Shown in pieces: positions 38,901-64,000 of a stretch of DNA of 64,000 nucleotides. Position numbers and translations under genes: made by a program. Source of the DNA: Asterias rubens (Eukaryota); NCBI RefSeq assembly GCF_902459465.1, contig NC_047078.1, forward strand, positions 11,408,001 through 11,472,000, given 5' to 3'. The notes beneath the pieces are model-generated. The model was not told the DNA's origin. It worked only from the letters and a program-made list of their open reading frames with translations, and made no database searches. Numbering within the stretch: the first letter of the stretch is position 1; every line of letters begins with the position of its first letter.

Positions 38901-41900
38901 CCATCATTTGGAATATTTGTTGTAATGCTTCTTGGAAAATAGTATAATATCTAAAAACAAACGATTATTTATTGTTGACCCTTGTTTAGTACGACATGTC
39001 CCGAAACACATGCCCGACTCACCTTTACGGCAAACCATTGGAAAACCAACTATGTGTCCAACCGTTATGTTTGTAAAGCTATTAGACCGACCCAGTGTTT
39101 ATGTTTACCAACGTCCGAAAAAAACTATTGTTCGATCTACTGTGTCTGACACTCACGATGGCCGACACATTGTGTCAAACAAAAAATTGCCAAAGGTCCA
39201 TGACGGATGAACTAGGGGATAGCTCTGTCTAAAGGAAATTGTTGTTATATTAATCCATTTGGTAAGTGTGTGTGGGGGGGGGGGTACAGGGCGCCCCCTG
39301 TCACATATCATTACTGATATGTCACCTCCAAAGTAAAAAAAACTACTTTTTCAGGAGATCACGTCCCAGTGGACGGTATTACTAGACGGACAGTGATCCA
39401 GGAGATATCTTCAACAGCTCGTATCACGCTCTTCTCTCTCGCCTCACTCGGCTCTGTCATGGGTTTGACGTTCCTCTTCATCAACATCAAATACAAAGAT
39501 AAGAGGTATGCAACATTACATCATTGCAAACTGTCTCGGATCGTATCTTGGTCCATTGTGTGCATAACTTCACTGTTCTATGAGGGTACAATGTAAGATT
39601 AGCTAATGCAATGGGACGTGAAATACGTTTGGGCACAATTTCAGCGTGTTACTTTGTATTGCAAAGGTACTGACATGCACTTGTTTCTCAAAAGAGGTGC
39701 TTGCGTCCGGTGCACATTTCACATACTGACCAGATATATTGTGTCTGTGTCTTCTTCGCTCTATAACCTTTAATAACTTTAGTTAGAGCTGTGAACATGT
39801 TTTGAGAATATGGCGTCATAGTGGGACAGCACGACAAAATGTTCCAAGTCACCTATCGCCTTTGGTTCTACACACAACAAACGTGGAATCGATTTTAAAG
39901 AACAACCAGTGTTTTGGTTTATCATTTTTGACATTCCAGAGCTATCAAGATGTCAAGCCCTTCCTTGAGTAACCTGACTGTAGTCGGTTGTCTGCTTCTC
40001 TACGCATCGGTGTTTGCCTCAGGATGGGATAAGACTAACCTGCCTGACTCGGCCATCGTCATCAAGTGTCATGTAAGTTTTGCTACCATCCCATGCAGTC
40101 ATCGTTGGGTATCGCAACCCGCAACAAGTTGAACTGGTCATTGTGTGTGCACACTCTATTTGAAAAGCCCGCTTTTTATGTTGTAATGCGTATTAAAGTT
40201 CAGGCTCAACAAATTCAGACAGTCCCGGCCCTATCACGTTTGGTCTCCGTCCACCATTATTTATGGAGTACATTCTAAACATTTTAAAATTCCAAATAGA
40301 GATTCTCTATTAATGTAGATATCTCTATATATTGTTAATAAAGATATCTCTATACATGTATATTGTTAGTAGAGATATCTATTATCAATATAGATATCTC
40401 TATTAATAGAGATATCTCTATTAACATTATATAGAGATATCTCTATTAATAATAGAGATATCACTATTATTGGATTGAAGAGAAGTTACACGTTTGGTAA
40501 TAACTCAAAACAGGTATTAACTTTTCACAGGCTTGTTATTTTATGCTTATGTTGGGATACACCAAGTGAGAAGACTGGTCTATGACAATTACCAAACGTG
40601 TACCTTCAAAAATGTACTCCATAATTATTCCCCGCTCAATGTTGGTTTTCATTGCACGGTCTGCGCTCCTAGCAGCATTGAGTGGATAAGCAGGGGACGG
40701 GATGGTATGTTTCGTTTCACATTATTAAAGGCCTATTCACACAATTAAATGGTTGATAAAAGCATTGAAAAAAAAAAGATGGCCGAAGACGAGCAGTGGA
40801 GTCGGGAGCGCAAACTGAGGCCGTGTCCGAAACGACGACTTCGGCTACAGCTACGTCTAGATCAGCGCGTCTACTAGTGTTGAGGAATAGGCAGACGCGC
40901 GCGATCTAGCCGTAGCTCTAGCCAAAGTCGCCGTTTCGGACACGGCCTAAGTTACCAAATGAGTAGGGCCTATATGAAAAGTGGAAGTTTGATTACCCGC
41001 TATTCTATCAGTCAAGCTTACATTTATTGCTTTAGTTCCCTAATGTTCCTACAGTAATTTATTTTGTCAGGTTGAGAGAATGCTGATATCTGTTGGATTG
41101 TCTCTGGCCTTCGGTTCTGTCTTCATGAAGACCTATCGGATACACGCAATCTTCGCTGTAGCGGTCAAACGCTTCAAGAAAATTGTGAGTAGACCTATTG
41201 CCTCTATACTGTAACCACTCCCCCCTTTTTTCTCTTTTTTTAACACAAAATAAGCCTTTTTGGCAGGCGAGAATTAGTGAAGTTTAGCTGCACGTTACGC
41301 GCGAGCAATACGTGCATGCTCATCGTGACGTCTGCGCGCACGGTACGTACCTGGCTGAAAATGTGAGATTCACTGACTCAATTGTTTGACGTTCACGTTC
41401 TAGTTCACTCCGGAACAGGCAACTAAATAAAACTCCCTATTGTACTGGTCACTATACGGCAAGCTTGACATTTTGTGTAAATAATTATCTCCGTGCACAA
41501 CCACAATCATGGGTACCCATTGTTTTCGTGTCTATTTTATGAATACCGGTTTGAAAAATACATTGAAATCAATATTATGTTGATATCAACCAGCAATCGC
41601 TGTGTCAATGATGAATAACAAGAATTGAGTTTTGTTGAATATAAGGTCTGCAAAGAGTTAAAACAATAATTATACCTTTATGATGGTGCAGCCATCTTCA
41701 TTTTCCCCATTGATAACATTGTAACAAACCGAGGCTGGAAGAACAAAATAGTCTGGTTCCTATTTGCATAATGATTATTAGCATTCATTATTGTTATTCG
41801 ATACAAGTACATGACCAAGATGGAGGCAGTATGATAAAGGTCTATATTTACCTGTTGTTCGACAGTTTAATTGTTTGGTTTCTTTGTAACAACACAAGAG

Positions 41901-44900
41901 AGTGCACTAATTGGTAATGTATAAGTTCTCACAGCTCTGTACCGACATTATACGCTGGTAAGAGATTTTCTATTTGGGACAGCTATTCTTGATTGATTAT
42001 TTTGTTATTTCATTATTTAAAAGGATCTGCCAGACTGGAAGCTGATTGGCGGAGTTGTAATAATCGTTTTTGCTGACGTCATAGTTTTTGTACTTTGGAT
42101 AATTTTGGACACGACGGCTGTTTACACACGGTCACTCCAGCCTTACGTAAGTTTTTGTGCTAAAAATACATCCGGAACAAACATCTGAATGGAAAATATG
42201 TTTTTAAAGTAAAATGTGATACAAACAATAATGCCTTGAAATTATAAGGTTTTTCTTCATGAAGTCAAAGGAAAACCACAACATTTTATTGTGCGAATCA
42301 TTATAATCTGCTTTTCAAAGTATTTCCATTCACACTTATTCATAACAAACGCTAAGGCGCCCCATCCGATACAACATGTCTATTTAAATTATGCCCGGTT
42401 GCTCGTTGTTCAAAATCTCCAGTGTCAGACAGTTCTAGCGTGTTTTGTAATGAATTCTGGACGCACTCTTAAAAGAACATTACAGAATTGGTGCGCAGAA
42501 AAAACAGTTGTGGCAGTGTAAGCACTTTATGTTATCCACCATACATAAACTGACTAACCTGTGTAAGTTTGGGATCGATCGGCCATCTGCGTCACAAGAA
42601 AATAGTTTTAAAAAAAACGATTACAAATTTGTTTTACATTTTGTTATCGATTCAAGGTGAAATTAATTATTTTAATTATGCTCACTGAGCGATAACTTCA
42701 AACGGTTAAATTGGTTCTATCTATTTCTCACCAAATTATGACATTTTAGACATAATTTTTTTAAGGAATGTTTTCTACTATCTTCATCATCAGTAGACCA
42801 TTTAAGTTTTATGTAATAATGTAAATCTGTGATCTGAGACGAGCTTTTTCTTCTTACAATTTCCGTAATGTTCATTGAAACAAATGTTATTTGAAACAAA
42901 TTAACTAATATTGAGGAATGACCAGGACATAACATAGTAACCGACTGAGAAACTATATCGTAAACCTTTTCTCTTTTTTTTCAGCTGGATATGACTGCAC
43001 CAGAGAAGGAGATTTTTGACGTACCGGAAATTATATATTGCAGCAGTGCACATGCGCAGTACTTCACCATGGCCCTCTACGTTGTAAAGGGAGTACTTCT
43101 CACCTTTGGTCTGTTCCTAGCGTGGGAGACAAGGAACATCTGTATATCACAGCTGAATGACAGTAAGTACTTTAAAGAAATACTCTGCCCTGCAGGAAGT
43201 GGGCGTGACTGCAGTCTGTTGACTAGACTTGGTCCTTTTAGTTGAAACAGCGCCCTCTTGTAATAAACCTCCGACATAATATATTGCGAGTTTAGGGCGC
43301 GTGATAGCTAGTCTTGTGGAAGCGTCTTTCGTGGCTGGGATGCAGAGGAATAACCGCGATCTAAGATTTGAAACTAGTCGTATTTGTTGACCGGTTCTCT
43401 AGAACCATAACCCCTGCAGCAACTACAGCTGTACTGGTTACAAGCCAAACATCGCATTGTATTCAAACTAGGCCTACTATGCCAGCATGGCGTAGCTCCT
43501 TCCTACCTTATTGACATTCCGTCTTTTCAGGACTCAAGTAGGCAACACTGGTATTTACTCTTGTAAACATCACTCTGTGATTGTCACTTTTTTTCTCAAA
43601 AAAATGACGACTAATGCTTGAAGGTTTATTATTTTACATACATCTTTATTCACAATGAGTATGGAATCATATCATTGCCACAAACTTGAAAATACATAAG
43701 AAAAAATCAAAACCCTTTTAGAATGATTTAGTGCGCTTTGTGAACCCATACTTATCTTTATGTAATTCTCTCACACTTCATACAGGTAAGTACATCGCAG
43801 CCTCAGTATACATTGTCTCTCTGACCATCGCTCTGACTATCCCAACTATGACCATACTGGGTGATGACGTCAACATGACGTTTGTCATATCTGCTTCGGC
43901 CATTTTGTTTGTCAACACTTCGATGCTTTGCCTCAATTTCCTCCCAAAGGTAACTGTTGTTGGCTTCTTAGAAGAGTTTGTCAAAATGGGAACTTTTAAC
44001 TTTCAGAATAGTGTCAAAAAATCGATGCATTGGGGCTAGTGTATTTTAGAATGCGTTTTTTTAAAGTTGGTTACAACGCGGCAAGATCGATCTCCCATGA
44101 GAACGAGGTTGGTGATATGACTCGATGAGGGCGTTGTTTGACTCAGTGACGTCATGGAATAGGTCACAGATCATGACGGCACAGCCCCTTTATGGATGTC
44201 GGGACCGAGCAGAATAGCTCCGAACTCAATCTCTGGTTCTTTTTCTGTTCTGCAGAGTGTGGGTCCGAATTCCGTTCTACACCCAAGGGGGTGGGTGGGG
44301 GGTGGGGGGGGGGGTAAATGGGTATGTGAAGGCAAAGATGGTTCTAGTGATTAATTTAGCAGAGTAGCGCATAAACTTGTGACACAGGCTGTATATACTC
44401 CACAGGGAGCTGATATAAAATCCCCAGTGACCAGGAGTAGTCATATTGAAGCGTTTTAAATAAAAGTATGTTTGTAAACCTAATTATGTTCGATATACCC
44501 CTTGCATAGACTGGTGTCGAAGATTTCAAACAATTGAAACGAGCAAGCGCGAACGTCAACTTGCCCCCGTCTTTATCCGCAATGATAAAAACATGCATTG
44601 GTTTTCCAGAACCTTTGATTTCATTGGTTACAATGGTTGCATTGAAAAACGTGCTGTGATGACGTAAGCTTTCCTAATAATCTGTATTTTGACTTTTCTG
44701 AGGTGGCGTTTGGCAGCTGCACTTTCGGTCGTCTGCATGAAGCTAGCAGCGTCGATTTGTTTTATATTAAGTAAACACGTACGTAGGATTTGACTTCGAA
44801 TCTGTAAGTAAAATAAATGCGAGGTCTATGTGCTTGTGGATGGGAAGAGACATAGGGTCGAGGTGGATCTCTTGCTTAGCTCATGTGAGCCCCCAAAACG

Positions 44901-47148: not shown

Positions 47149-48307
47149 TTAACCAGAACATATAAGGAAACGTCCAGGTCCCTTCTTTCTCTTGTCACAC
47201 GTACATGCTTGACCGTACTTCTCGCAAGCTGAAAACAAATTAATAACAAACATTTTTTTTTATGGCAGTGGAAACTATTGGTAGTTACTGAAAATGGTTA
47301 TTAGCAGAAAATCTTTCTTGGTGACGAGTAATGGGGAGAGGTCGATGGTATGAAACATTGTGAGAAACGGCTCCCTCTGAAGTGCCATAGTTTTCGAGAA
47401 AGAAGTAATTTTCCACGATTTTTGATTTGGAGACCTCAAATTTAGAACTTGAGGGCTCGAAATCAACCATGATGAAAGCACACAACTTTGTGTGACGAGA
47501 GTTTTATTTCTGTTATTATTATCTTGCAAGTTCGATGACCGATTGGGCTCAAATTATTTACAGGTTTGTTCTTTTATGCATATATTGAGATAAACCAACT
47601 GTGAAGGCTAGTCTTTTGACAATTACCAATAGTGTCCACTGCCTTCATGAAATTGACAGGCGAGTCCATAAAGGAACCCACAACCTAAGCAATTCTAGAG
47701 CAGTGTCTTACCAACTAGACCACCGAGATTGGCGGGCAGCTAGAGACACTTCGAGGCCTATATTGTAGCAGCATACAGTGCTAGCACACATCAGTGTTTG
47801 GTAAAACCCGAATTACTATTCTTTATCCCCGATGCAAATTGTTCATCTATTAAAAGCGTACCTGCTGCTAAAATAAGACTCTGCTTTAGAATGGCAAAGG
47901 TAGTCGGTTCGAATCCCAGGAGTAAATATGCCTGTGATTTTGTTTTTACAAAACTCGGGGAAATACTGATGAGTATACAGTGCTTACACACATCGGTAAG
48001 ACACATCTCTAGAAAGGCAAAGGTCTCGGGTTTCGAATCTCACCTGAGTGCCAAACTTTTTTTTTTTAAATAGACATCAGTGTTGGGTAAAATTAAAACG
48101 AACAGCCTACTTACGTTCCATATCATCCCGTGTGAGAGGTCCGAGCTTGTTTTTGCCTCCCCTGTTCTTGCCCCTGCCGCGGCCTCGTTTCACGAACTCC
48201 ATTAATTCATCAACGGGAAGGTAGTCCTCATCACCGTCTTCATCTGCCAGGACAAAGGCCGTCATTACGGCTAGCGCCATCAACGTTATAAACAACTTAG
48301 CCACCAT
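47149..48307 (-). CDS. CrAMP-like cysteine-rich cationic prepropeptide, copy A (exons 48307-48115 and 47228-47149; 90 aa): MVAKLFITLMALAVMTAFVLA / DEDGDEDYLPVDELMEFVKR / GRGRGKNRGGKNKLGPLTRDDMEPCEKYGQACTCDKRKKGPGRFLICSG
   Basis: Hydrophobic 21-aa signal, acidic pro-piece and KR site. GTAAGT donor (48114) and TTTTCAG acceptor (47229) form a phase-1 intron. 4-Cys C-terminus; AATAAA at 47000-46995. The C-x-C-D-K-R-K motif and GR/K-rich N-terminus match my recollection of Patiria pectinifera PpCrAMP. Confidence 0.88.
47263..47646 (+). mobile_element. Kolobok/T2-like MITE in CrAMP-A intron 2
   Basis: GGCAGTGGAAACTATTGG...CCAATAGTGTCCACTGCCT. Confidence 0.75.
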
Positions 48308-49338
48308 TGTTGTACAGAACTACACACAAGGGATAAGGAATCTTGTTAGCGGAGCTTACAGAATAAAGAACTTTCACGGGCGTAGCTATAGCATTGTTAT
48401 AAGTTTTAGTGAAAGAAGAAACCATTTCACTAAATGTTTTGAATTTTTCATTTTTTGCTGCAAATTTTGACCAAATGACCAATGTTTTTATTGTATGCAT
48501 TATGTTGGAGACACCGAATGAGGATACTGGTATATCATAATTATTTTAAGGTGAACCTTGCTTTTGGGCCGCAGGGCCTGGATTTTCTTCAGGTATTACA
48601 TTTTCAAAATTATGAAAAAAGAATTAGAAGTAATTTTCCACCGATCATTTGAACTTGATTTTAGATTTTGAGTGGCTCGAAATCAAGCATCTTAAAGCAC
48701 ACAACTTCGTGTGACAAGGGTGTTTCTCGCAACTTCGACGACCATTGAGTTTAAATTTTTACAGGTTTGTTATTTTGTGCATGTTGAGATACACCAAGTG
48801 AGAAGACTGGTCTTTGACAATACCAAAGGTTTCCATTGTCTTTATGATGTAACCATTTTGGTGTTTGGTGAAGGCGTTATCCGCTCTTGTTGTTTCTACT
48901 TCTCATAAAACAAAGACAACATAAAACAACTTCACATAAAACAAAGACACCATGCAAAGTTTTAAACCCTGCATAAAGACAACATTGTCTTGCTTTTTAA
49001 AACAACCACGGGGTGCTGCCCTCTTAACGGAAAAGAAGCCAAACTAGAAATATTTCAGTTTGAAAAATGCAATTAATATAGATAAGCTGTCTTGCCATAA
49101 ATTATGATGACATTGAAATCAGAAAATAGGATGTTATATTCACGTCCAGACACAGTTTGCCTTGAAAGAAACTCCCTCAGTTTACCCTAAACTTAAGTTT
49201 TTCAAAAGTTACCACAATTGTTGAGTAAAACCCATTTGCAATGGAACGGCCGACGTGTAAAATTCAATTTTTAAAACAGGTTAATGCAGAAAAAACACAA
49301 ACATTTTTATTATTGAATATTAACTTTAAAAGACTTAC

Positions 49339-49486
49339 CCCGTGCTGTGTTAGAGAAATTCTTGAAATCAGACTTTGAAAGCACCAGCAGAAGTGAATAA
49401 CCCGTGCACCTCAACAAGCTCTTTTTATAAGAAATTCTGAAGATGGACCCATATGGTATCTTAACCCTTAGGTACCAGCGCGTATC
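49339..49486 (-). promoter_or_regulatory. Copy A promoter and non-coding exon 1: TATAAAAA (49429-49422), Inr-like TTATTCAC (about 49400-49393), donor GG|GTAAGT at 49339/49338, upstream GATACGCG motif (49486-49479)
   Basis: TATA, then about 30 nt, then a 55-60 nt exon and a consensus donor. Matching acceptor TGTGTAG at 48320 with a GCTAAC branch-point-like motif just 5' of the ATG exon. Confidence 0.75.
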
Positions 49487-52409
49487 TCCCAATGACACAC
49501 CAATCAATTACATTTAACAATTAATTAATAATAGTTGTAAACCAAGATTAACTTTAGTTCATGCGAATCCGTTTTTTAATTAGTACGGCTGTTGGGAATG
49601 GCGTATGGTTTTGAGGCTTATGGTTTGTTTAGTGTTGATTGCATTTAGTTTATTATCGACATCGCTGGTCGCACCTAATGACTCACACTAACTGGGACAA
49701 ATTTCATAGAGCTGCTTAAAGGAACTGCATACTAAAATGCACTGCATCCTACAATGTGTCAACTACATTGCCCTGCATGTATTGACTCACTTTTTCTCTA
49801 TTGTCTAACTTAATAAATGAAGACTCATAGACACTATTGGCAAATGTCAAAACCAGTCTTCTCACTTGGTGTTTCTTATTATATACGCACACAGGATAAC
49901 ACGCCTGTGAAAATTTGAACTCATTTGGTCGTCGAAGTTGCGAGGTACTAGGCTTATGGAAGAAAGAAAAAAACACTTTTCACACAAAGTTTTGTGCTTT
50001 CAGATGCTTGATTTCGGGACCTTCAAAATCAAATTTGTTGAAAATTATTCTTTCTCGAAAACGACGTCAATTCAGAGGGTTTCTCTCACAATGTTTCTTT
50101 TACTATTAACATCTTTCCATTGACCGCTAAAAAGTACGTTTTTATGCTAACAATTATTTTGAGCAATTACCAATAGTGTCCAGTGCCCTCCCTTTGTTCA
50201 TGCCAAACGCATGCATAGAGACTTTACTATGGACGGTGATACGCGCTTTAAAAGAGTTGTTCACTCGGCCTCGTTTCCGTGCATCCGGGAATGAAACGAA
50301 ACATGACAAATCAAGGTTACTGCAATCTGACTTTGAAGTCATTAAAATCTGATAAGTTTCAATGACTTCATGCGTGGGAAGTTCTTGAGGAATTTTCATA
50401 GGTTAGGAGGGTTTGTTAATATCCTTTTTGTCGAACAAGTTTGTTATCCAACTGTCCAGATATTGCGTGATATATTAAGTTTATCTGCTGGCTCATTTAA
50501 TTAGGTTTTATTTAATTATGTCATTTTCCATCGACAATCATACTGATTTGTATACATTTCTTTGAAACTAAATTCGAGCAAAATTTCCATTTTAGATTAT
50601 TACTTTTTATTTTTTGTATATATGAATGGTTCAAGTCTACCGGGACCCGGAAACAATTATGAGTTTAATTCCCCTTGAAATAAATCACATCGTGGAATGT
50701 CAAAACATTAATATTGCAAATCAATTGAACTGTCAGGGATTGCGGCTGCGGTAATTTGTTCTCCGGAGAGGTACTTCATGAGGTGTAAATCGTTTTATAA
50801 TGTTTTCGGTAGTCGAATCAAGCTTGAAATCAAGCATGACTTATAAGTGAACCAAATCACTGTGGCTAATTCCTGTTCACACATCACTATTTCCCCGTGG
50901 TTGCCCTGGGGTTGGCCTTTTCACACCATGATCGGCTTTATTCCTGTCTGCTTTCGGTATGCCCCGAATGGACATACCCCGGGAATAGCTACCCCTGCTC
51001 TAGAGTAGTGGTATAGCCAGTGAAACCGCTAGTGATTTTTGCAACCGGAACCCGTGTCGATGGAAAAACCCGTGACACAGTGTGAAAGTGTGGCGGGATA
51101 ACCGTGGGGTAAAACAAGTTCCGGGGTCCCGGGGTTGTATTCCACGGGATGAGGGATACAGTGTGACAAGGGCTTTGTGGACAAATGGCTCTTGCAATGT
51201 GATCCAGAAGCACCAATGTTAACCTTTACTATATTATTAAACCATTCTTAATGTCCGTGGTTATTTTACAAGCACTGCTAATGCTGGTACACGCGACCTA
51301 AGGTTAATGTCCCATTCGAAGGACACAGCAATTATGGCAAGCATCTTGCTCAACGATACCTTGCCATACCACCCCTGGGATTCGAACCCATACTCTGCTG
51401 AGCCACATATTAAGGATGTGCTTAAGCAGTAAATAAAATTTCTTAACAATTTTTATTGTCTGCTAAGCAGAAATGAGCAGGGTATCAGTCACAATTTGTA
51501 CACATAATATGACATGGTAGTTCTGATGGTAACCCTATTTTTGGGGTGGGTGAGCATACATTTGTAGTGCTTAGCTACTTGGTGTGCTTAAGCAGCTCCA
51601 CGAAATCCGGCCCTGGACAGAATCTCCAGAGTTTATATACGGTACTCTTCATCGCTCGGACACGACACGCAACATAAGTTACACAAAACTGAAAGATACA
51701 AATTTAATCAAAATATAAATATTTTTTTATATAAATGAAATGACAGAAAATGAGAAATCCGTGGAATTTTAGTGTTGTATATCACCTCCAGAAGATTGAA
51801 CCAACTTTGCAAATATTTTGACACTGGCCATTATTCATTATTAGTGCGTTAATTGCAAGTGACGATTTCCTTGGGTGATTATTGCTAATTAATTAACTAC
51901 TTGGAGTGATCAATTGATGAAAGTTGCAGGGTTCCAGATGGGCGTGATGTCCTTGTATTCTGAATATAAAGAATGGGTGGACTTCATAACCATTATTTTA
52001 TTGTCAAGTCTATTGTAGAGGCAAGGTCCCGGTTCTATTCTAGGTAAGTTTTCGCTGATTCATCGTTTCACTAAAATTTATCGTTGACAAAACTTCATTC
52101 CGTTTGGTTGTAATGCATTTGCAAAGTAGTCTTAATTCACACATTAATTTACTTATTTACTTATTTATTTATCTGCCTATTTTTGTGGGGACTTGGACAA
52201 CCAAACTTTGACTAGTTAGTGATTTGAACCAACGACCTCTGATTGAATTTGCCGGCACAAGCAAGTTGCTTGGCCGTGTTTATGCTCGCTCAGCCCCATT
52301 CGCATCAGCGTGGTTAAACAGGATTGATCTCTAGTTGTGCTCTTTGTTATGCGTTGATGTAGCTGGCTTCAAAAAGACTGCTTCAATGCCTGCAGCAATA
52401 CGCAATGGA

Positions 52410-52631
52410 TGCGTTCGATTAGCTTCCCTGGGTCCTGCCTCCGGGTACGTTCAAATAGCTTCCACGTCACCAAAGGGGCTCACCCGGGTCAGCCCCAAGT
52501 GGCCTGCTTGTGGAGTGGGTCACTTGTGAAGCTGTCACCATGAGAGGGGGAGTGATCGTTCGAATAGCTCTTGTCAGGGGCTCACCGGAGTGAGCACCGT
52601 GGGGTCGACCCAGGGAAGCTAATCGAACGCA
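52410..52631. mobile_element. GC-rich MITE-like element with a perfect TIR of about 25 bp (TGCGTTCGATTAGCTTCCCTGGGTC)
   Basis: Inverted repeats directly visible; TSD unclear. Confidence 0.6.
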
Positions 52632-52969
52632 CCCACTGTATCCGCCCTTAGACCGGTCCCCAATGATTTCATTGCATACACTGGTTTTATTGGATACAAA
52701 GGTTTAAATGCACTGGACACTATTGGTAATTACTCAAAATAATTGTGAGCATGAAAACTTAATTACTTGGTAACGATAATGGATAGCTGTTACGATCTTT
52801 CGATCGTCTACATACACTGTATGCATTATATTATTTTGTACATGTCAGTTTCTAATGTTTATACATCAGAAGGAATTGACTGCAAATATCCGTGTGAAAT
52901 GGATGTGAGGGTCAAAGGTACATCGGGACCAGTTTTTTTTTATGAAGTTTTCAACACATTACGGTTTAA

Positions 52970-53326
52970 AGGCAGTGGACACTATCGGTTATTACTCAAA
53001 ATAATTGTTAGCATAAAACCTTATGATGAAGAGTAATGGGGAGCAAAACATTGTGAGAAACGGCTCCCTCTGAAGTGACATAGTTTTTGAGAAAGAAGTA
53101 ATTTTCCACGAATTTGATTTCGAGACCTCAGATTTAGAACTTGAGGTATCGAAATCAACCATCTAAACACACACAAGTTCGTGTGACAAGGTTTTTTCTT
53201 CTTTCATTATTATCTCGCAACTTCGACGACCAATTGAGCTCGAATTTTCACAGATTTGTTATTTTATGTATATGTTGAGATTGACCACGTGAGAACACTG
53301 GTTTTTACCAATAGTGTCCAGTGTCT
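52970..53326 (+). mobile_element. About 360-380 bp TTAA-flanked MITE (Kolobok/T2-like), complete copy
   Basis: TTAA|AGGCAGTGGACACTAT...ATAGTGTCCAGTGTCT|TTAA. TTAA TSD with AG...CT ends fits Kolobok rather than piggyBac (CCY ends). Confidence 0.8.
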
Positions 53327-54677
53327 TTAAAGTAAAACTAACTTTACTGTGCTGTGGTTGTGAACATACTCCAGGATAAAGCCCGGTTCATACTTCCTGC
53401 GAATGCGATTAACATTTGACGTTTCATGGCTGTTTCGCATCGAGTGATTCGCATCAGTTGAACAGTTCAACCGATGCGAATTATTCGTTACGAATTTGTG
53501 ACTTCAAAGATCGTTTTGCATTCGCATATATGAAGTATGAACCGGACGTTACTTGTGGAAAGGTTTTATCCATGAAGGTTAAACCATTGGGGGAAAGTTG
53601 CGGACTGGTTTGTATCAAAGGCCGGTGTTTGCCAAATACAAATCCCAATTTATCCGCAAAATGTCGGCAAACTCTTTTCTGAGCAGTCTTCTATGATTTG
53701 ACAAACTGATAAGGGCAAAATTCCATGGCTCTGCTTACACAAAATTAGGTGCTAACGGTTCCTGTAAAACACACAATTTTATTGGCTGTTAGCACAGAGT
53801 TCCACGGTAAGCAGAGCGGTGAAATTGGACAAAGATTTCATAGCAATGTGCACGTCTTCTGAGTATTCTGCTTTTGCCTGTCCAAGGGTATAGGAATTTG
53901 TTGCTTATTACCAAACGCGATTAAGTCAATCGAAAACTTGCTAAAAAACCGGTGGGTAATTTTTTTTGACCCAACCTTTTTTACACATAATAAAGAGACT
54001 CATAAACCAAGTTCATATGCTCATAATTCATTTATTTTATTTTATTTTTTACTCATTTAAAGGAAGAAACAGGGACAAACTTTGTCGAGAGTTGTTATCT
54101 TCATGAAATCTTAGTCTTAAGGTTTTGTTGATGTGTTTTTTAAAAACAGTGACATCGGAAAAGTTTGCAAATAGCTGAAAACATGTTATTATGTTTTCCT
54201 GTTCATACGACAGATGATGAAAACAAAATTCACCTGGGTTGTGATTTACCCAAGGAGTGTGAACATCTTAGACGTTTCCGATGCCAATGTGAAAACAGGG
54301 TTAAAGACCCCAAAATAACTTTGGTCAAAGGGTAACACTAGACTTTGTCATATAAACTTACGTTCTTCTGTTTTTGATCACACATTAAGATCTGATATAG
54401 GATTGCATAATTCATCATCTGATATTTCTGAGATTTTTAATTGTTTTAATTTACACAAGATTCGTTCTTTCTTTAGTTCATTTACAACTTGTTTACATAA
54501 ATACCCATTCAGTAGTATTTTGGGGTCGAGCTCATGTCGCTCTTGGCTAATTAGTAGTCATTTTGTTTTGGTGCATAACACATTATTTGGCATTAGTTTA
54601 CAAGTTAGACACTAAAATATATAACATTGCTTGTTGGGAATTGTAGGGTCCAGTCATCGTAGTGGTGCACTGTTTGT

Positions 54678-56227
54678 TTAGTTGCAGACGAGGTATCGGT
54701 TATTGTTATCGAAGCTCAGCCGCTTGTCACAGACGCATTGTTGGCCGTATCTGTCGCACGCTGGATGTTGAGAAAATAAAATAACAGGAAATAAGAAAGT
54801 GTACAAATTGGGTTTTTACTTCTCATGCAGGTTTTCACCAAAGATCCATGGGTAAAGGGAACGTATGATTTGACCCACTCTGCGAAAATGAGTCAGATGT
54901 CGCCAAATGCATTATTAAGTAATGGACAGTTAGTGTGGAAAACATCCACATTTTATATTTGCATGGTAAACCTTTAAAACACTTTTTAGGCACTAAAGCT
55001 ATAAAAACAACAATTTTGTAATCATGCTTTAGTCTAATTTGTATCCTTTTGTGGAAAATAGTAGTTTAAATCATCACTTTACTTGTGATTCATTTTTTAC
55101 AAAAAATGATATACTGGCTAGTTTCAAATGGGAGTAACTCAGCAACGCGATACATCCCAAAGCCTTTACCAAATAACTGCAGCTTGTGCGTTCTTTCAAG
55201 CCTTGCATATTAAAAAAAAAAAACAGTTGTCAACATCTGGCTCGTTTTGACAGAGCGGGTCACATTTGCAGCAACCCTATTTTTGAGCATTTATTTTAAA
55301 AGACGTTTTTGAGCTATCGCCAATAGCATTTTTGTCAACACAGAAAGTGCCATCTGTAAAAAAAAAAAAATGAGAAACGTTTCGAGCAAAACCATTTCTC
55401 TGATTCAAGTTTTGCTGGATACAAACTTGTACTTTTTTGTATGAACACAAACAATTAAAGTGAAATGATTCTAAAAAAAAGAAAGATTAGTTCTATCTAA
55501 GCAATTATGTGAAGCGCATTGATACGGTTTATTGTGGAACGCACTTATTAAGGATTTGTTTGTTATTAAATGGTTAACTCTGTTCCAGCTGTAGTGGTAG
55601 GTGGCAGTGTGCCTTTGTTGGCAGTTGATTCGGGTCAACAGCCCAATTCAGATAAAGCATTGCACACGTTTGGCAATATTGTCAAATACAAGTATTCTCA
55701 CTTGGCGTATCCCATTATGTGCTAGTGTAACAAATCTGTGACAATTTGGACTCGATTAGACGTCGAAGTTCCAAGAGAAAAATTAAATAGTACCTTGTCG
55801 GCAGATAGGTGCGCTATTTATAAGACTTCGATATTATTATTAATAGTAGGGAGGTTTCGCATGCGAACGGATACGGTTAGTGCGACGGATACGTCATCAT
55901 TATGACGTCATACGCTACTCGCTATCCGCTTTACGTGCGGACGACACTGATATCCTGCTTGCTACACGTAAGTAGGTTACGGATAGCTAAACGTTTGTGT
56001 ATGCGTATCCGTTCGCATGAGAAACTTTCCCTAAGATTCGATATTGTTAACTTACTTTCCATGTCGTCTTTTGTGAGTGGTCCCATCTTTCCCCTGCCCC
56101 TGTTTCGTCCTTTGCCTCTCTTGACGAACTCCATCAGGTCGTCCACGGCGTATTCTTCTTCCTCAGCGAAGACGAAGGCAGTCAGGACGGCCAGAGCCAT
56201 CACGGCGAGGAAAATCTTGGATGCCAT
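54678..56227 (-). CDS. CrAMP-like cysteine-rich cationic prepropeptide, copy B (exons 56227-56056 and 54760-54678; 84 aa): MASKIFLAVMALAVLTAFVFA / EEEEYAVDDLMEFVKR / GKGRNRGRGKMGPLTKDDMETCDRYGQQCVCDKRLSFDNNNRYLVCN
   Basis: Clear paralogue of copy A with an identical intron position and phase (after DDME+1 nt). GTAAGT donor at 56055, CATCCAG acceptor at 54761, same Cys framework. Confidence 0.88.
55849..56031. mobile_element. TA-flanked palindromic MITE, 24 bp from the CrAMP-B intron-2 donor
   Basis: TIR GGGAGGTTTCGCATGCGAACGGATACG / CGTATCCGTTCGCATGAGAAACTTTCCC; TA on both sides. Confidence 0.65.
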
Positions 56228-56422
56228 TTTAGATTTTGTTTGTTTTCTGGAAGTAAAACACAAACGAGTGAATTGATAGTTTGACATTTTTGCATCAAGA
56301 ATAATTAAGTATAGTAGTTTGGTTGTATACCTTTTATATCGATGTGTGTTAACACTGGATATAATTATAGTCTAAGGTTATTTTCAGATAAGGGAAACCG
56401 GACTTTGTAACAGTTCGTTTAA

Positions 56423-56803
56423 AGGCAGTGGACACTATTGGTAATTGTCAAAGACTAGCCTTCACAGTTGGTGTATCTCAACATATGCATAAAATAACAA
56501 ACCTGTCAAAATTTGAACTCAATCGGTCATCAAAGTTGCGAGATAATAATGAAAGAAGAAAACACCCTTGTCACACGAAGTTGTGTGTGTTTATAGATGG
56601 TTGATTTCGAGACCTCCAGTTCTAAATTTGAGGTGTCGAAATCAAATTCGTGGAAAATTACTTCTTTCTCCAAAACTATGGCACTTCAGAGGGAGCTGTT
56701 TCTCACAATGTTTTATACCATCAACCTCTCCCCATTACTCGTCACCAAAAAAGGTTTCATGCGAATAATTATTTTGAGTAACTATCAATAGTGTCCACTG
56801 CCT
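56423..56803 (-). mobile_element. Kolobok/T2-like MITE, complete copy, in CrAMP-B intron 1
   Basis: TTAA at 56419-56422 and 56804-56807; TIR AGGCAGTGGACACTATTG. Confidence 0.82.
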
Positions 56804-58133
56804 TTAAACACAGTCGGTTGGTTTCAAATCGAAGAAGAGTTTGTGAGAGATTGTCCCACAATGCTTTCGCAAAGCTTCTTTTATTTTGGTTTAACGGGTT
56901 TGTGTTTGCTTTTTTCAATGTTAGGCAAAACTACTGCCCCTACAATTAAATTCTGATTTTTGTTTTGTACCGTTGCCTGACAATTCTTTACCTTTACATT
57001 TTAGGCAAAATGAGAACCTGCGAATTCATACACAAAAACATTCCAAAAAATTCGAATTGTGATCATCGATCATCTTTAATCGTTACATTTTCTCTACCTG
57101 TTCATCGTTCAGAAATAACGTCTTTTTGTCATAAAAACACCACGTATAGTGTCATAACAACACGATATGAAGCTGAAATTAAAGCTCGCAAGCCTCCGTT
57201 TCAACATTTAATGAGAACACACAGGTTAGCTTGAACAATGATCTGTAAATCTACAGCAACAATATCTACATGTGATTATTGCACGCACTTTCATGAAACT
57301 AATATTAAATGCCGCAACTAATAAGCAACGGTAGTATTGAAGCCTTTACAAGCTGTTTCTGGACTTTGACTGCAATTATTTCTCCAAAGGTTTAGTACAT
57401 GTTCAGAATAAAAAGTTCAAATTTTGTTCGGCAAAAACCAAATATTTATGGTACGCAGTCCATGACAATAAACTGCACACAGACGGTCCATTCTAAACGA
57501 AACTATGCCTTACAAACTGTTGAAAGTTCAGTGTACATTTTTGTTTCCATTTTTCGGCAAAAGCCTGCAATTGTATGATGTGCTGACCATAAACTGAACA
57601 AAGACTGTAAGTTCTAAACGAAAGTTCCTCAAAATGACAGTATACAATTTGCAGAGTACATTGCAAAAGTATTTAACAATAAAGGCAATATTATCAGAAT
57701 GTCCTACATTTAAGGAACATCAATTTAGCAATCAAAAATGAAAACTGATTGGGAATTTTTTTTTAAACGATCTTTGGTTGAACAAAGAATCCTTGTGAAG
57801 CGACATTGGCAACGATACTGATAAAGTAAGGAGAATCTTAACATGCAGTCAATTTCATAGAACTAGACAGCCCAAGGGCATAGCACAGACATATTAGGCC
57901 AGAGATAGCAGGTTCAAATCCCGCTCTAGTCATTGTTTCAGGATACAACTCAACATGTTTTATTCAGTTGTCTACAATTTGTATGAAGTGCTAACAGTTG
58001 AGTTTTAAACTGGCAATGTGCTTCTTGACAACACGAAGTGGATGGTTTTGTTTAGATTGCAAATAACACCGTAGCTTCAAGTAAAGATTGTATGTTAACA
58101 ATCGGAATGAAATAGAAAAGTGTATGTACTCAC

Positions 58134-58281
58134 CGATGCTGTACTTGGAGGAAAAGTCGATGTTGCTTTGGGTAGACGAGTGGAGAAGATGATTTCTTGT
58201 AGTCCAAAGGGTCCTCTTATATAGAGTTTCGATGCTCCGAAACATCTGGTAGCACCAGAATCATGTGAAGTAACGCGTATC
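58134..58281 (-). promoter_or_regulatory. Copy B promoter and non-coding exon 1: TATATAA (58223-58217), about 60-nt exon, donor CG|GTGAGT at 58134/58133, upstream GATACGCG motif (58281-58274)
   Basis: Same architecture as copy A. The exon end ACAGCATCG|gt resembles ACAGCACGGG|gt in copy A. Acceptor TTACTTCCAG lies about 20 nt upstream of the ATG at 56227. Confidence 0.75.
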
Positions 58282-58744
58282 GAACACTGCTGGGAACAAA
58301 CCACCATTTCAAATAATAACTTCAACTTCACCGTCCATGCGGAGAGCTTATTTTATTAGCGTTTGTTATTTAATTTAGATGGTGTAGTTATGACGGGGAG
58401 TATATGAAATGTATGTCAGATGTAGACTTCTGAAGAGTTGATCCTTTCTTGTCTGATGATTACTATCTATTTTTGAAGCGTGTCCAGGAGCGTAACCATT
58501 TATTTATAAACTTCACAATCCCTAGACCGAATATGACATGTTATTACCTTTTTTTTGTATACGATTTTAGGTATAACAGATGTACATATAGACTTTATCG
58601 CAAATACCAATGCGCACGCGCAGACTGTTGAATGAGGTGCATTGTGGGATATATATGGATCAAATTTGGATACCAGCAAGACCACAATGCACCTAATTCT
58701 TAGCTGTACGCGCGCGCCCCGGTATTTGCGAAAAGGTCTATTAA

Positions 58745-59509
58745 AGGCACTGGGCACCTTTGGTAGTTGTCAAAGACTAGTATCCTCCCTTGATTATGTA
58801 CAGGCCTATCGCAACATATGCAATAATAACAAATCTGTGAAAACTGAGACTCAATTGGTCATCGAAGTCGCAAGAGAATAATGAAAAAAGTGTAAGTTGC
58901 AAAACTAAAGATGCCCAAAGAAGGCGTCAGGTTTGAGGTTTTGCATAAGATTCAACTTTCTCAGTGAAAAATTACCTCAGTGAGAAATTACTTCAGAGGG
59001 AGCCGTTTTTTAAAGTGATGTTTGCCATCAACAGCTCTCCGTTGAACAATATCAAGCCAGTTTTATGCTAACAGTGTTTTTGAGTATTTGTTTACCACAA
59101 GTATCCTGTGCATTTAACAGTACGAAAATTCAAGTTTTAAAGGGGAATACCTCTCGTTTTTTGAACCGTCTCAGTTGACTGTTTTAATCCGACTAAATAC
59201 ACATTAAAGACAATGGAAACTATTGGTAATTGTCAAAGACAAGTCTTCTCACTTGGTGTATCTCGACATATTGCATAAAATGAAAGTTTGAAGTCAGTTG
59301 GTCATCGAAGTTGTCGAGACCTCAAATTCTAAACTTGAGGTCTCGAAATCAAATTCATGGAAAATTACTTCTTTCTCGAAAACTACGTCACTAATAGAGG
59401 GAGCCGTTTCTCACAATGTTTTATACTACCAACCTCTCCCCATTACTCGATACCTAGTAAGGTTTTATGCTAAACTATTTTGAGTAATTACGAATAGTGT
59501 CAACTGGCT
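58745..59509 (-). mobile_element. Two adjacent Kolobok/T2-like MITEs (58745-59113 and 59208-59509). Further partial copies lie at about 1470-1644, 3727-3845, 8165-8476, 9185-9480, 13930-14252, 16760-17125, 27640-27800, 34490-34873, 40490-40600, 48440-48830, 49825-50188 and 52705-52790
   Basis: TTAA flanks and shared internal sequence recognisable in each copy. Ends of the partial copies are approximate. Confidence 0.7.
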
Positions 59510-60910
59510 TTAATTGAAATGCACAATTTATAACGGGTTTCTCATAATGACAATAAAGGATGACAAGGGGTGTCGACCGCGAAGGTCCCAGTTCGAATCC
59601 CACCCATGGCTGTTGTAACTTATTGTATGAGCTTTTCAAAAGTATGTTAACTTCCTGCGTCTAAAACCAATTCGTACTCGTTGGCTACTATCATATGTAC
59701 ACGTAATGACAAATTCGAAAGCAGTATCGATAAATATATTTGGTTGTTTCTTCACTCTTGCACACCGATAAGCACTGTGTACTTTCCCGGGCTCTATGAA
59801 AACAAATGAACAGACAACACTCGTTTGGATTCAAACCCAACAATCTGTATAGTTTATTCCTTGAGCATACGTTTAACCTATTGTTACTGAAGTTTGTTAT
59901 TTGCTTGTCTCAAACCAAAGTCTACACCCTCTCCCAATCTTTTGTTTTGTCCTTCGTGTTCCCAGCCGCCTTTTGGTTAATCGTCCCCTATCCTTCACCA
60001 CTGTTTGGTTTGTTTCGTTTTTCTGTGTGCTTCCGCCTATCGCCCTTTCGGGTATTTTGTAGTGTTGACTTGGCTGATTTCATTCCATATAGTAGATACA
60101 TATAATTATATGTGTGTTGTGTTTTGTTACAAGTAGGGTTCTAAACTGTAGGCCTATAACATCTATTTTGAGTAATGTTTGTTCTGAAAAGAACCGGTGG
60201 CTAACAACTCAATAATAATGTGAGTCGTTATGACCAGACCAAACTAATTCAGAAGAGAAATTCGCATGGGCATTACCACAATCCTTTCTCCCGGTACTTC
60301 CTGCGAATGCAATTGTAAAGCGAATTTTTACGTCATAGCACTTTCTTTGCTGCGAATTTTTCGCAGGAGCTGAGCATATGTTCAACTGTTGCGAAGTATT
60401 CGTTGCGAAACTGTTAGGGTAGAGATTGATACTATGATGAACAAAAATCGCCAGGTGGCTTCCAATGTAACTTGATACTCGTATTTGAGAACCGTTATAT
60501 AGCGCGCCACCATGCGTCTGCAAGAAGACATTTTATTGGTTCATTAGAAAGAAAATGACACTAATTGTACGCAACGTTCTCTTCATGTTCATATTCAGTT
60601 TATGTTACCGCTGGAGGCAGAGGGAAGGGGGGGGGGGTAGTACCATTGGCTCATATATCTTAATTAATTTGATAAATAAACAAATTTATAAAAGGAATGG
60701 TTCTGTACACTCTTGCTTCCAACAATATGTTTGCCTGCGAAAAGGCTGTTAAAAATTGTTGAACTCACTGTTTCAGTCACAGCAAAGACAAGGTTACACA
60801 GCCGATTTGCATAAAGGAAGTTTTTTTTATATAGAAGAGTTTGCGGTAACACCATGTAATGACTGTCTCTAAATGAGTTGGGGTGGTTCTGAAAAGGACC
60901 GTTGGATTAA

Positions 60911-60950
60911 CTCGACGTTTCGATCAGTATGCTCTGATCGTCTTCTGGAG
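60911..60950 (-). ncRNA. Second hammerhead-like copy (core CAGAAGA, probably inactive). A third, decayed copy lies at about 63490-63530 (+)
   Basis: Same repeat family (flank GGTTCTGAAAAG(A/G)ACCG). Helix II GAUCAG/CUGAUC keeps its pairing despite substitutions relative to the 3655-3696 copy. Confidence 0.4.
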
Positions 60951-63277
60951 AATGCTGGACTCTGATGCTGCATGCTGCTTAAGTACTGGGCGGCGGATTA
61001 GCTAGGTGATGCACGAAGGCGGGAAACACAGGCGGGAAGTTTTTTTTATTATTATTATTTTAAAGGGTTTTGAAGATCAAACTTAATAACCCTACGTATT
61101 CACTGTGAATGAAGATGTATGTATATATAGAAGCGTCTCTAGTCGTCAGGTTTTTTGAAGAAAAAAAATATTCGAGTCAGCATTAATTTCTTGTGACGTT
61201 GTTTTACTAATAAAAAAATAAATAAAAACAAATTCGGCCATCTTCAAACGGTGTACAATTACTTGAAAAAAACATGCTGCACATGCTTCCATATCTGTGT
61301 TATGATTGGTCGATGTTACGAGCAAATTCGTGCGGTTTGTCAGCTTGCACCTTCCGTCGTCTGCACGCAGCGATTGCATAATGTTGTGTCACATAGTATT
61401 TTTTTTTCTGCAAGTCTCCGTCGGAAATGGATGCGAGCTCAAATGTAACTTATCATGGAAACAATAAAGGTAGTATCTGACATTATTCAAGAGCCTTGAA
61501 GTGTAACGTCACATGTTCAGACTACTTCGGACCTAGACTGGTCATTTTGCATTATCCACAACAAGAAAGACAGGTACCTGCTTCCCATTACCAGTGATTT
61601 CATTGGGTGTGTAGTGACCTAAATCGTCAATACACCTTAGTGTTTTTTATTGTTGTTGCATTTGGCACGCCATACAGCTACATGTACTGAACTTTGACCT
61701 CACTGTGCAAAGAGTTACATGTACATGTACAGCTGACCACGTGTAGTTTTTGCTAGCACTGAGTTGCACATGTTTTACTATTTCTCCATTTTTCGCGTTC
61801 GTTCTACTCAGCAATTTCCAGCGTATGTACAGCAGTTTTGTTCGTCAGTTGTATGAGTCAATTCGTCTTCGTTTCTCCGTCAAACTGTTTAGTCATTGTG
61901 AACTTTGTGAACACTATTTCTGTATTCTGTGGATTGGAATTGGTGTTCATCGTACCGTGCTACGGTCGGCGTTTTAACCTGTAGTGTAGCACTCCAGTCT
62001 TCAGGACCTCGACTTTTCTCCGTCATGGTGTGCAGATATTAAGTGGTGAGTTTTATTAGACATCCTTCTAAAGTAGTTTTGACTGACTACTACAGATGCA
62101 ATGATGCCATGGATAAACGTGCAGTGGCATTCTGTTATACATAATGTTTTTCATGGGTCCGGGTGATGTGAGCGCAGCTGACAAACACCTCAGACCATAA
62201 CAACTCAGCTGACCATGCACTCTTTATGTACAGTACATGTACTTTGCATATAATGTCAGTATAGGAATCGGCTGTGAGTGAAAAAAATGTTGGTGAAAGG
62301 TAAGTATGGACGGGGATTATACTAGGCTAGAGGCCACTCTCTGGCGTAGATCACGATCCTCGAAGTGTGACGTCAAACGTTCAGACTACTTGGGACCTAG
62401 AATCAACCAATGGGGGGCTTTTGGGACGCCAGGTTGCTGCAGACTTACCAAGTAAATAGGTTGTTCGTTGTTGCGTGCGCAGTGGTGTGCGCAAGCTCAG
62501 AATAAGATCAACCACGGACATTTACCTGGGAAGTGTGCTGCCACCTAGCGTTTCAAAGTCTCAAAGTCTTTCCGTGGAGTACTACAATTATTGTTTAACT
62601 GGCAGCGAACTACTTGAAAATAAAAACACGTTGAGACATAAGAGTTCTCTTTGCTTTTAAAACTAATTTATTTCAAACCAATCAAAAATAACACAACATG
62701 TTTCATGTTAAATTCTGGTAATCTAGAAACTATACCTCTTTCAGTTGTACATTACTTAGTTAAAACATGCCATTATCTCATGTAATACAAGCATTAAACT
62801 GTTGATAGTTGAAGAACTGGTGCAGGACTCTTTCGTCGAGTTTTGATTGGACATAGTTTCTGATAAAATGCTTTCAAGTTCTCTGATTTTGTCCTGCGTC
62901 AGTTATTAAAGTTACGTACACATACAAGTTCCGAGACATGCAAATCTAAATGTTAACAAATTGATGTAGGCCTACATTTCGATGTCATTGAAAACTTAAG
63001 ATCGGACAAGTTAGATATCCATGCGCATGTCTGGATTTACTTTGTACTTGCAAATGTAATGCTATGGCACTTCGTAATGACGTCACAGTGACGTACTATC
63101 AATGAAAATAAGGTATGGTTTCTACCATTATAGTAACTTTTTGTTTACTGTGGTATAAATAAATTGTGTCTGTTAGGTGGATGGTTTTTAAGAGTTAAAC
63201 AAAAGTAAGGAAGCACACTTTAAAACGTCATTGGGGCGGGGTCAAGATGTGTGGAGTCAGATCGTTGTGAGAGTAGT

Positions 63278-63360
63278 TTAACTATCGTGACACACCAAGA
63301 AACGGTCCATGCCAAACTTTCTCTTGTCGCACACGCAGCTCTGGCCGAACTTTTCGCAAT
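63278..63360 (-). CDS. CrAMP-like copy C, last coding exon only: (x)CEKFGQSCVCDKRKFGMDRFLVCHDS*. Upstream exons lie beyond the window
   Basis: Acceptor TTTATTTTACAG at 63361, the same phase-1 start, the same C-x6-C-x-C-DKR...R-F-L-V-C pattern, and a TAA stop. No signal-peptide exon was found in 63361-64000. Confidence 0.8.
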
Positions 63361-64000
63361 CTGTAAAATAAACAAAATGAAAACAGTGAATACATGATAA
63401 TAGTATCAACAATAAAATCAGGATTTGAAACTTTGCATGGGGGAAATACCATTATAGTGAAGGTTTGCGATAACGCCATGTAGTCAAAATCTCCAGAAGA
63501 AGATCAGATCATACTGGTTAATGGTCGAGTTAAAACCAACGGTTCTTTTCAGAACCACCCCAACTCATTGAGAGATTTTCTTAACTTGGTGTTACCACAA
63601 ACCTTAACTATAACAATAACATCAACAACACCACAACATAACACCAAGAAAAATAGGTTATCTGATTGATAAACAGAATAATACCACATGTTGTTTTTCG
63701 TACAACCTAAATTGTTATTTTGTTTCCCCCAGTTTTTCATCTGAACTCTGCCGAACTTGTTTGACATTCGCATGTTTACGAGGTGCTGCCTTATCTGAGA
63801 GAGTCGTTTTTTTTTCAAGGTAGATCTCGAAGCCTTTTTCGGGAACATTTCTTGTTTTACTTCCAAAAACTACGCATATGCTTAGGAAATTATTCGTAAC
63901 TAAAGTAAAATAGTGAAAAACACAATGACTTTGCGAGAATAAGATATCCAGCTTTTTGTTGTTGTGAGAAGTTATAATTGGCAAGCTAACTCCGAAACAG

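What the first reader, a model, noticed from the sequence alone, without database searches (positions are those of the whole stretch)
47149..63360. Hidden tandem cluster of at least three CrAMP-like secreted cysteine-rich cationic peptide genes (putative sea-star antimicrobial peptide locus)
Seen: three minus-strand last exons share C-[ED]-[KR]-[YF]-G-Q-x-C-x-C-D-K-R-x(5-7)-R-[FY]-L-[IV]-C. Two of them splice in phase 1 onto exons encoding a 21-aa signal peptide, an acidic pro-piece ending LMEFVKR and a Gly/Arg/Lys-rich arm. Predicted mature peptides: A 49 aa (about +8), B 47 aa (about +4). The ORF track shows only the Cys-free exon, so the family is easily missed. Known, from memory: PpCrAMP of Patiria pectinifera (GRKGRKGVRGNPFFNCEDEFGNPGCVCDKRKGGAAVTC, disulfides C1-C3 and C2-C4) has the same arm, CxCDKRK and 4-Cys plan. 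Inference: this is a multigene innate-immune effector cluster with a two-module design, a linear cationic exon plus a disulfide-hairpin exon. The C1-C2 spacing (6 versus 8) and the R-[FY]-L-[IV]-C end differ from PpCrAMP, suggesting a distinct subfamily. A neuropeptide or pheromone role is not excluded.
Basis: partly seen in the sequence, partly recalled or inferred. Interest (0 to 1): 0.88.

Follow-up and report, generated by a model that had tools for sequence, protein, structure and literature searches.

The report
Known starfish CrAMP peptide gene cluster
The three hidden peptide genes are real and expressed, but two of them are the already published Asterias rubens CrAMP-1 and CrAMP-2 antimicrobial-peptide genes, and the third is an annotated but unnamed sister gene.

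Summary
Three minus-strand terminal exons carry the 4-Cys motif. Two of them join phase-1 GTAAGT donors of signal-peptide exons. RNA contigs from four public runs show exactly the predicted junctions, 47228/48115 and 54760/56056.

The interpretation, CrAMP-like, is also right, but the thing is not hidden or new. The window is Asterias rubens (GCA_902459465.3).
- Gene B is CrAMP-2 (AYD37770.1, LOC117301867).
- Gene C is CrAMP-1 (AYD37769.1, LOC117301869). Its ATG exon lies about 640 bp beyond the window end.
- Gene A is RefSeq XP_033641753.1 (LOC117301866), an "uncharacterized protein". It is a third paralogue with no author-given name.

- The cluster holds exactly three genes. There are no more in 47 kb on one side or 10 kb on the other.
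- The same C-B-A order occurs in A. amurensis.
- Patiria miniata has a tandem pair, and the phase-1 intron just before Cys1 is the same there.
- Each gene has a third exon, a 5'-UTR exon behind a TATA box. This is shown for B and inferred for A.
- The paralogues are old: synonymous sites are saturated. All are under purifying selection.

Antimicrobial function is inferred from the Patiria prototype only. The scan's other note on this DNA (s1-180106, promoters) covers the same locus. The scan had not noted this on other DNA.

The parts
47149..47228 (-). Gene A (LOC117301866, unnamed third CrAMP paralogue): coding part of the last exon, holding the 4-Cys module and stop. The 3' UTR runs on below 47000.
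   Evidence: RNA joint 47228/48115 in 4 runs. Contigs continue to 47000 and beyond (table 8).
48115..48320 (-). Gene A ATG exon (ATG at 48307-48305): signal peptide, acidic propiece, KR site and cationic arm. Phase-1 donor C|GTAAGT.
   Evidence: The spliced product equals XP_033641753.1.
49339..49398 (-). Gene A putative 5'-UTR exon (inferred). TATAAAA lies at about 49429-49423, a GTAAGT donor follows 49339, and GATACGCG lies at 49479-49486.
   Evidence: sequence; 8-mer. RNA contigs run 48-197 nt beyond 48320 although depth is 0 at 48326-48500. The exon is inferred by analogy with gene B.
54678..54760 (-). Gene B (CrAMP-2, LOC117301867): coding part of the last exon. The 3' UTR extends to about 54070.
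   Evidence: Joint 54760/56056 in 4 runs, with contigs reaching 54070-54083.
56056..56246 (-). Gene B ATG exon (ATG at 56227-56225). Phase-1 donor A|GTAAGT. The acceptor follows ttttacttccag.
   Evidence: The product equals AYD37770.1 / XP_033641754.1.
58134..58195 (-). Gene B 5'-UTR exon. TATATAA lies at 58223-58217 and GATACGCG at 58274-58281. The 5' end is approximate.
   Evidence: Joint 56246/58134 (GT..AG on the minus strand) in runs X4 and X6. A matching 11-nt loose end in X2. Sequence.
63278..63360 (-). Gene C (CrAMP-1, LOC117301869): coding part of the last exon. Its ATG exon lies about 460-640 bp beyond the window end.
   Evidence: L001:10001-10181 holds the ATG exon. The product equals AYD37769.1.

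Best explanation
This is the Asterias rubens CrAMP locus: three tandem, same-strand, three-exon genes in the order C (CrAMP-1), B (CrAMP-2), A (LOC117301866). Each gene has a short 5'-UTR exon behind a TATA box. A second exon encodes the signal peptide, an acidic propiece, a KR cleavage site and a G/R/K-rich arm. A last exon is joined in phase 1 one residue before Cys1 and encodes the 4-Cys module. The likely pathway is inferred from precursor logic and from the Patiria pectinifera prototype: signal peptidase, then prohormone-convertase-type cleavage after LMEFVKR. That would release cationic peptides of 47-48 residues (pI 9.1-9.9) with two disulfides. Peptide A would also be C-terminally amidated through its terminal Gly. 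The peptides would act as secreted antimicrobial effectors. Gene identity, splicing, expression and family membership are shown. Processing, disulfide pattern and antimicrobial activity of the Asterias peptides are inferred.
For: Exact identity of the spliced products to XP_033641753.1, to AYD37770.1 (CrAMP-2) and to AYD37769.1 (CrAMP-1). Predicted junctions seen in RNA contigs of four runs per gene. A 5'-UTR exon joint 56246/58134 for gene B. Homologues in P. miniata and Acanthaster planci with the same architecture and 4 invariant Cys. The phase-1 intron sits one codon before Cys1 in Asterias and in both Patiria genes. The same C-B-A order occurs in A. amurensis, and Patiria has a tandem pair. 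Paralogues have pS 0.77-0.81 (saturated) and pN 0.19-0.24. Between A. rubens and A. amurensis, gene C has dN/dS of about 0.09 and gene B has no amino-acid change. Reviews describe PpCrAMP as an antibacterial beta-hairpin peptide and the prototype of an echinoderm family.
Against: No activity, mass-spectrometry or tissue data for the Asterias peptides were available here, because run identities are coded. B and C lack the C-terminal Gly, so they would not be amidated like the prototype. The Asterias arm carries a conserved acidic patch (GPLT[KR]DD[ML]) that is absent from the Patiria and Acanthaster homologues in the alignment and lowers net charge to +4 in B and C. Strong purifying selection is not the pattern often seen in effector AMPs, though the counts are small. 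The AlphaFold model is low-confidence (pLDDT 57.8), so it gives no support for the hairpin.
Confidence: 0.85

Rival explanations
1. The Asterias CrAMP-type peptides are mainly signalling molecules (neuropeptide-like, hormone-like or cytokine-like), and any antimicrobial activity is incidental.
For: The precursor layout is that of a neuropeptide: signal peptide, acidic spacer, dibasic KR site, and a C-terminal Gly amidation signal in gene A. Sequence is tightly conserved between A. rubens and A. amurensis (dN/dS 0-0.09). The arm holds a conserved non-cationic motif, GPLT[KR]DD[ML]. Relative abundance of A and B differs strongly between RNA samples: the joint depths are 25416 and 8483 in X1 but 13.7 and 2483 in X2.
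Against: The prototype was isolated by its antibacterial activity (reviews). The depositors named the Asterias proteins CrAMP. The peptides are cationic with pI above 9. No receptor or neural-expression evidence is at hand.
Confidence: 0.13
2. One or more copies are non-functional duplicates or annotation artefacts.
For: Gene A has no author-submitted record, only Gnomon models.
Against: All three reading frames are intact with canonical splice sites. A and B are seen spliced in RNA contigs. Synonymous sites are saturated while proteins stay 62-67% identical. Orthologues of all three are intact in A. amurensis.
Confidence: 0.02

Closest known systems
PpCrAMP of Patiria pectinifera (Kim et al. 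2018, Dev Comp Immunol 86:203; primary paper not held, known here through reviews and the P. miniata orthologue LOC119735486)
   Same: The prepropeptide plan is shared: a leader of about 21 aa, an acidic propiece, [VM]KR, a G/R/K arm and a 4-Cys module with C-x-C-[DN]-[KR]-[KR]. All members are cationic, with pI about 9.2-9.9. The phase-1 intron lies one codon before Cys1. The genes are in tandem.
   Different: The Asterias peptides are longer (47-48 versus 38 aa). The arm is 21-24 residues versus 15 and carries an inserted GPLT[KR]DD[ML] patch. C1-C2 spacing is 6 versus 8 and C3-C4 is 12-14 versus 10. The C-terminus is R-[FY]-L-[IV]-C. Only paralogue A keeps the Gly amidation signal.
Asterias rubens CrAMP-1 and CrAMP-2 (AYD37769.1, AYD37770.1)
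   Same: They are identical to genes C and B of this window.
   Different: Gene A is a third paralogue, 62-67% identical to them. It is more cationic (+8 versus +4), has a Gly amidation signal, and has no author-submitted record or author-given name.
Other echinoderm Cys-rich AMPs (strongylocins, centrocins of sea urchins)
   Same: They are secreted cationic Cys-containing peptides of echinoderm immunity.
   Different: Strongylocins have six Cys. Centrocins are heterodimers. No sequence similarity was found in any search here.

Membership tests
CrAMP family (asteroid cysteine-rich antimicrobial peptides) | Sequence homology to the named family members | tested here: met
   B and C are identical to the records named CrAMP-2 and CrAMP-1. 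A is 62-67% identical to them. A versus P. miniata LOC119735486 gives E = 2e-16. The Asterias profile hits P. miniata P0015 at E = 1.2e-8 over the full length.
CrAMP family (asteroid cysteine-rich antimicrobial peptides) | Precursor architecture: signal peptide, acidic propiece, dibasic KR site, then a cationic mature peptide at the C-terminus | tested here: met
   Alignment A2 has invariant ALAV-TAFV, VKRG and 4 Cys. Computed pI is 9.1-9.9. The signal peptide was judged by eye, not by a predictor.
CrAMP family (asteroid cysteine-rich antimicrobial peptides) | Four cysteines in the pattern C-x(6-8)-C-x-C-x(8-14)-C | tested here: met
   Spacings are 6/1/12, 6/1/14 and 6/1/12 in Asterias; 8/1/10 and 8/1/12 in Patiria; 7/1/8 in Acanthaster.
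CrAMP family (asteroid cysteine-rich antimicrobial peptides) | Shared gene structure (intron position and phase) | tested here: met
   The phase-1 intron splits the codon just before Cys1 in A, B, C and in both P. miniata genes.
CrAMP family (asteroid cysteine-rich antimicrobial peptides) | C-terminal amidation (my recollection of the 2018 abstract; P. miniata LOC119735486, the counterpart of PpCrAMP, ends in Gly) | tested here: inconclusive
   Gene A ends in ...CSG, an amidation signal. B ends in ...CN and C in ...CHDS, with no Gly. The chemistry cannot be tested here.
CrAMP family (asteroid cysteine-rich antimicrobial peptides) | Disulfides C1-C3 and C2-C4, beta-hairpin fold | not testable with these tools
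   The AlphaFold2 model has mean pLDDT 57.8 and pTM 0.27. No PDB relative and no Pfam family was found.
CrAMP family (asteroid cysteine-rich antimicrobial peptides) | Antibacterial activity of the mature peptide | not testable with these tools
   Only the Patiria prototype is reported as active (reviews).

The most novel reading that the evidence does not exclude
Gene A (LOC117301866) is an unstudied third Asterias CrAMP. It has a distinct chemistry (net +8, predicted C-terminal amide) and sample-specific, very high expression. The forcipulatid long-arm subfamily, with its conserved GPLT[KR]DD[ML] patch and strong purifying selection, may have split roles among the three paralogues, for example one potent effector and two peptides with signalling or regulatory roles.
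Probability: 0.25. Interest if true: 0.4.

Novelty: already known. Interest (0 to 1): 0.2.

Why it matters
CrAMPs are the only antimicrobial-peptide family described from sea stars, so a clean map of the locus is useful groundwork. That map covers three genes, three exons each, the promoters, conserved synteny and a conserved intron phase. The unnamed, most cationic paralogue A is an obvious candidate for synthesis and testing. None of this changes what is known about the family.

Tried and rejected
- AlphaFold2 on the 9-sequence family alignment gave pLDDT 57.8. That is too poor for fold searches or disulfide inference, so no fold search was run.
- Pfam and PDB sequence search gave only noise.
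- The primary PpCrAMP paper is not in the held library. Searches for the LOC and XP identifiers found no papers.
- A synteny test with the Death-domain gene that neighbours the Patiria genes found nothing in the window.
- Conservation between A. rubens and A. amurensis is about 88-90% across all non-coding DNA. It therefore could not single out the gene A 5' exon.
- A bacterial promoter scan is irrelevant to this eukaryote and was ignored.
- Acanthaster genomic context could not be fetched.
- The third species' 18.9-kb contig has no DNA available.
Full report
**Observation.**
All are on the minus strand.
- 47149-47228: ...CEKYGQACTCDKRKKGPGRFLICSG*
- 54678-54760: ...CDRYGQQCVCDKRLSFDNNNRYLVCN*
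- 63278-63360: ...CEKFGQSCVCDKRKFGMDRFLVCHDS*

A hundred shuffles of the window gave 0.0 full-pattern matches, and 0.12 matches to the short core C-x-C-[DE]-[KR]-[KR], against 3 observed. Each exon follows a pyrimidine tract and an AG.

Upstream ORFs at 48107-48307 and 55931-56287 encode a hydrophobic leader, an acidic stretch ending LMEFVKR and a G/R/K-rich arm. They end in C|GTAAGT and A|GTAAGT. Joining them in phase 1 gives open 90-aa and 84-aa products.

**Identity.**
- Searching the ATG-exon translation of gene A returned a 90-aa protein of Asterias amurensis. In the same cluster it returned XP_033641753.1, "uncharacterized protein LOC117301866 [Asterias rubens]", which is identical to the spliced prediction.
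- The gene B exon returned an 84-aa protein held as XP_033641754.1 (LOC117301867), GenBank AYD37770.1 and UniProt A0A386GVB2, named "CrAMP-2". It is again identical.
- The same search returned the A. amurensis orthologue of an 87-aa A. rubens protein, XP_033641755.1 (LOC117301869), AYD37769.1, A0A386GXY7, named "CrAMP-1". Its C-terminus is the third Cys exon.
- Fetching that gene's contig (GCA_902459465.3, LR699108.1) showed that it overlaps the window. The CrAMP-1 ATG exon lies about 460-640 bp beyond position 64000.

So the window is A. rubens. Two of the three genes are the published, named CrAMPs, and the third is in RefSeq but unnamed.

**Expression and gene structure.**
- Logan contigs of four RNA runs laid on gene A all contain a joint 47228/48115 that skips 886 nt, with CT..AC ends on the plus strand, which is GT..AG on the minus strand. 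Depth reached about 25,000 in run X1.
- Four runs laid on gene B all contain the joint 54760/56056.
- Two runs also show a joint 56246/58134 (GT..AG). A third run has an 11-nt loose end at 56247 that matches the sequence just before the GTGAGT at 58133.
- CrAMP-2 therefore has a 5'-UTR exon of about 60 nt, which lies 1.9 kb upstream of the ATG exon and behind a TATATAA at 58223-58217.
- For gene A, contigs continue 48-197 nt beyond 48320 while the adjoining genome has zero depth. This implies a similar exon.
- The candidate for that exon is about 49339-49398, behind a TATAAAA at 49429 and ending in GGG|GTAAGT.
- The gene B 3' UTR runs to about 54070. The gene A 3' UTR runs beyond 47000.

**Extent of the cluster.**
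No further motif copy exists in window 1-47000, nor in the 10 kb beyond CrAMP-1. Within the sequence examined the cluster is therefore three genes: C, B and A, head to tail on the minus strand over about 17.5 kb of coding span.

**Relatives.**
An exhaustive HMMER search with the Asterias profile found only 10 proteins at E <= 0.001.
- Full-length hits include P. miniata LOC119735398/LOC119735355 (E = 1.2e-8) and Acanthaster planci LOC110986500.
- From the Patiria hit, P. miniata LOC119735486 was reached. Its predicted mature peptide is 38 aa plus a C-terminal Gly, with pI 9.25. This both supports that recollection and ties the Asterias genes to the prototype. Gene A versus this protein gives E = 2e-16.
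- Reviews confirm that PpCrAMP is an antibacterial beta-hairpin peptide, the only AMP known from a sea star, and is regarded as the prototype of an echinoderm family.
- The primary paper was not available.

**Comparative anatomy.**
- Across nine family members the leader (ALAV-TAFV), VKRG and the four Cys are invariant.
- The phase-1 intron splits the codon immediately before Cys1 in all three Asterias genes and in both Patiria genes.
- A. amurensis has the same C-B-A order. It is followed by a convergent class-C GPCR gene.
- P. miniata has LOC119735486 and LOC119735398 in tandem, 10.7 kb apart. A second copy of the latter lies 362 kb away.
- An unidentified species has two ATG exons 6.6 kb apart on one contig.
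- The Asterias peptides form a distinct long-arm subtype. The arm is 21-24 residues with a conserved GPLT[KR]DD[ML] patch, C1-C2 spacing is 6, and the C-terminus is R-[FY]-L-[IV]-C.

**Selection.**
- Between the paralogues, synonymous sites are saturated (pS 0.77-0.81). Non-synonymous divergence is 0.19-0.24. It is lowest in the prepro part (0.13-0.17) and highest in the Cys module (0.29-0.37).
- Between A. rubens and A. amurensis, CrAMP-1 has dS 0.13 and dN 0.012. CrAMP-2 has dS 0.058 and dN 0.
- The introns of the paralogues share only interspersed repeats.
- The duplications are therefore old, and all copies are maintained by purifying selection.

**Mechanism.**
- Shown: three expressed or intact genes that encode secretory prepropeptides of the CrAMP family.
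- Inferred: cleavage after the 21-aa leader and after KR, two disulfides, amidation of peptide A through its terminal Gly, and antibacterial action as in the Patiria prototype.
- The main rival is a signalling role. It is kept alive by the neuropeptide-like precursor, the strong conservation and the acidic patch in the arm, but it has no positive evidence.
- AlphaFold2 gave no usable model. Pfam and PDB hold nothing related.

**Verdict.**
The residual interest lies in the unnamed, most cationic paralogue A and in the locus map assembled here.

Noticed in passing
window 18598-20243: A 36-bp minisatellite of 45.7 copies at 97% matches. Its unit is built from TTAGGG-like (telomere-type) hexamers, which causes a GC skew of 0.69 in that 2-kb bin. 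It sits between apparent exons of the NFRKB-like gene.
   Followed up: partly
window 20758-20980 (+), probably also 22958-24796 (+): An exon encodes the second winged-helix domain of NFRKB/INO80G (Pfam PF25793, E = 2.6e-35). It is followed by a 612-aa Ser/Thr/Pro-rich open frame with no Pfam hit, which is likely the same gene.
   Followed up: partly
window 63536-63581 (+), 3608-3652 (-), related copy 60839-60908: Two Rfam histone 3'-UTR stem-loop hits score just above gathering (36.9 and 35.4 bits against 34), with no histone ORF beside them. One lies inside the CrAMP-1 intron on the opposite strand. A third, 86%-similar segment suggests the stem-loop is carried by an interspersed repeat.
   Followed up: partly
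window 47258-47700, 52960-53310, 56420-56810, 59200-59480: Copies of one interspersed repeat (84-93% alike) lie in both orientations in CrAMP introns and spacers. RNA contig depth there reaches 10^5-10^6, so the element is very abundant in transcriptomes. It explains the recurring ...[20 protein letters not shown]... ORFs.
   Followed up: partly
window about 26948-44500 (+); L006:13836-21183 (-): In A. amurensis a class-C GPCR gene (ANF_receptor + 7tm_3) converges on gene A. The ORF at 26948-27280 may be its first exon in A. rubens. It had no Pfam hit, so this is inferred from synteny only.
   Followed up: no
window 49479-49486 and 58274-58281 (-): GATACGCG lies 57 and 58 nt upstream of the TATA boxes of genes A and B. 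The window has 3 matches against 0.34 expected. The gene B promoter is now anchored by an RNA joint.
   Followed up: partly
L004 and L005 (Patiria miniata JADOBP010000021.1): Two loci 362 kb apart encode the identical 78-aa CrAMP-like protein, each followed by a convergent Death-domain gene. This is either a recent segmental duplication or an assembly duplicate.
   Followed up: no
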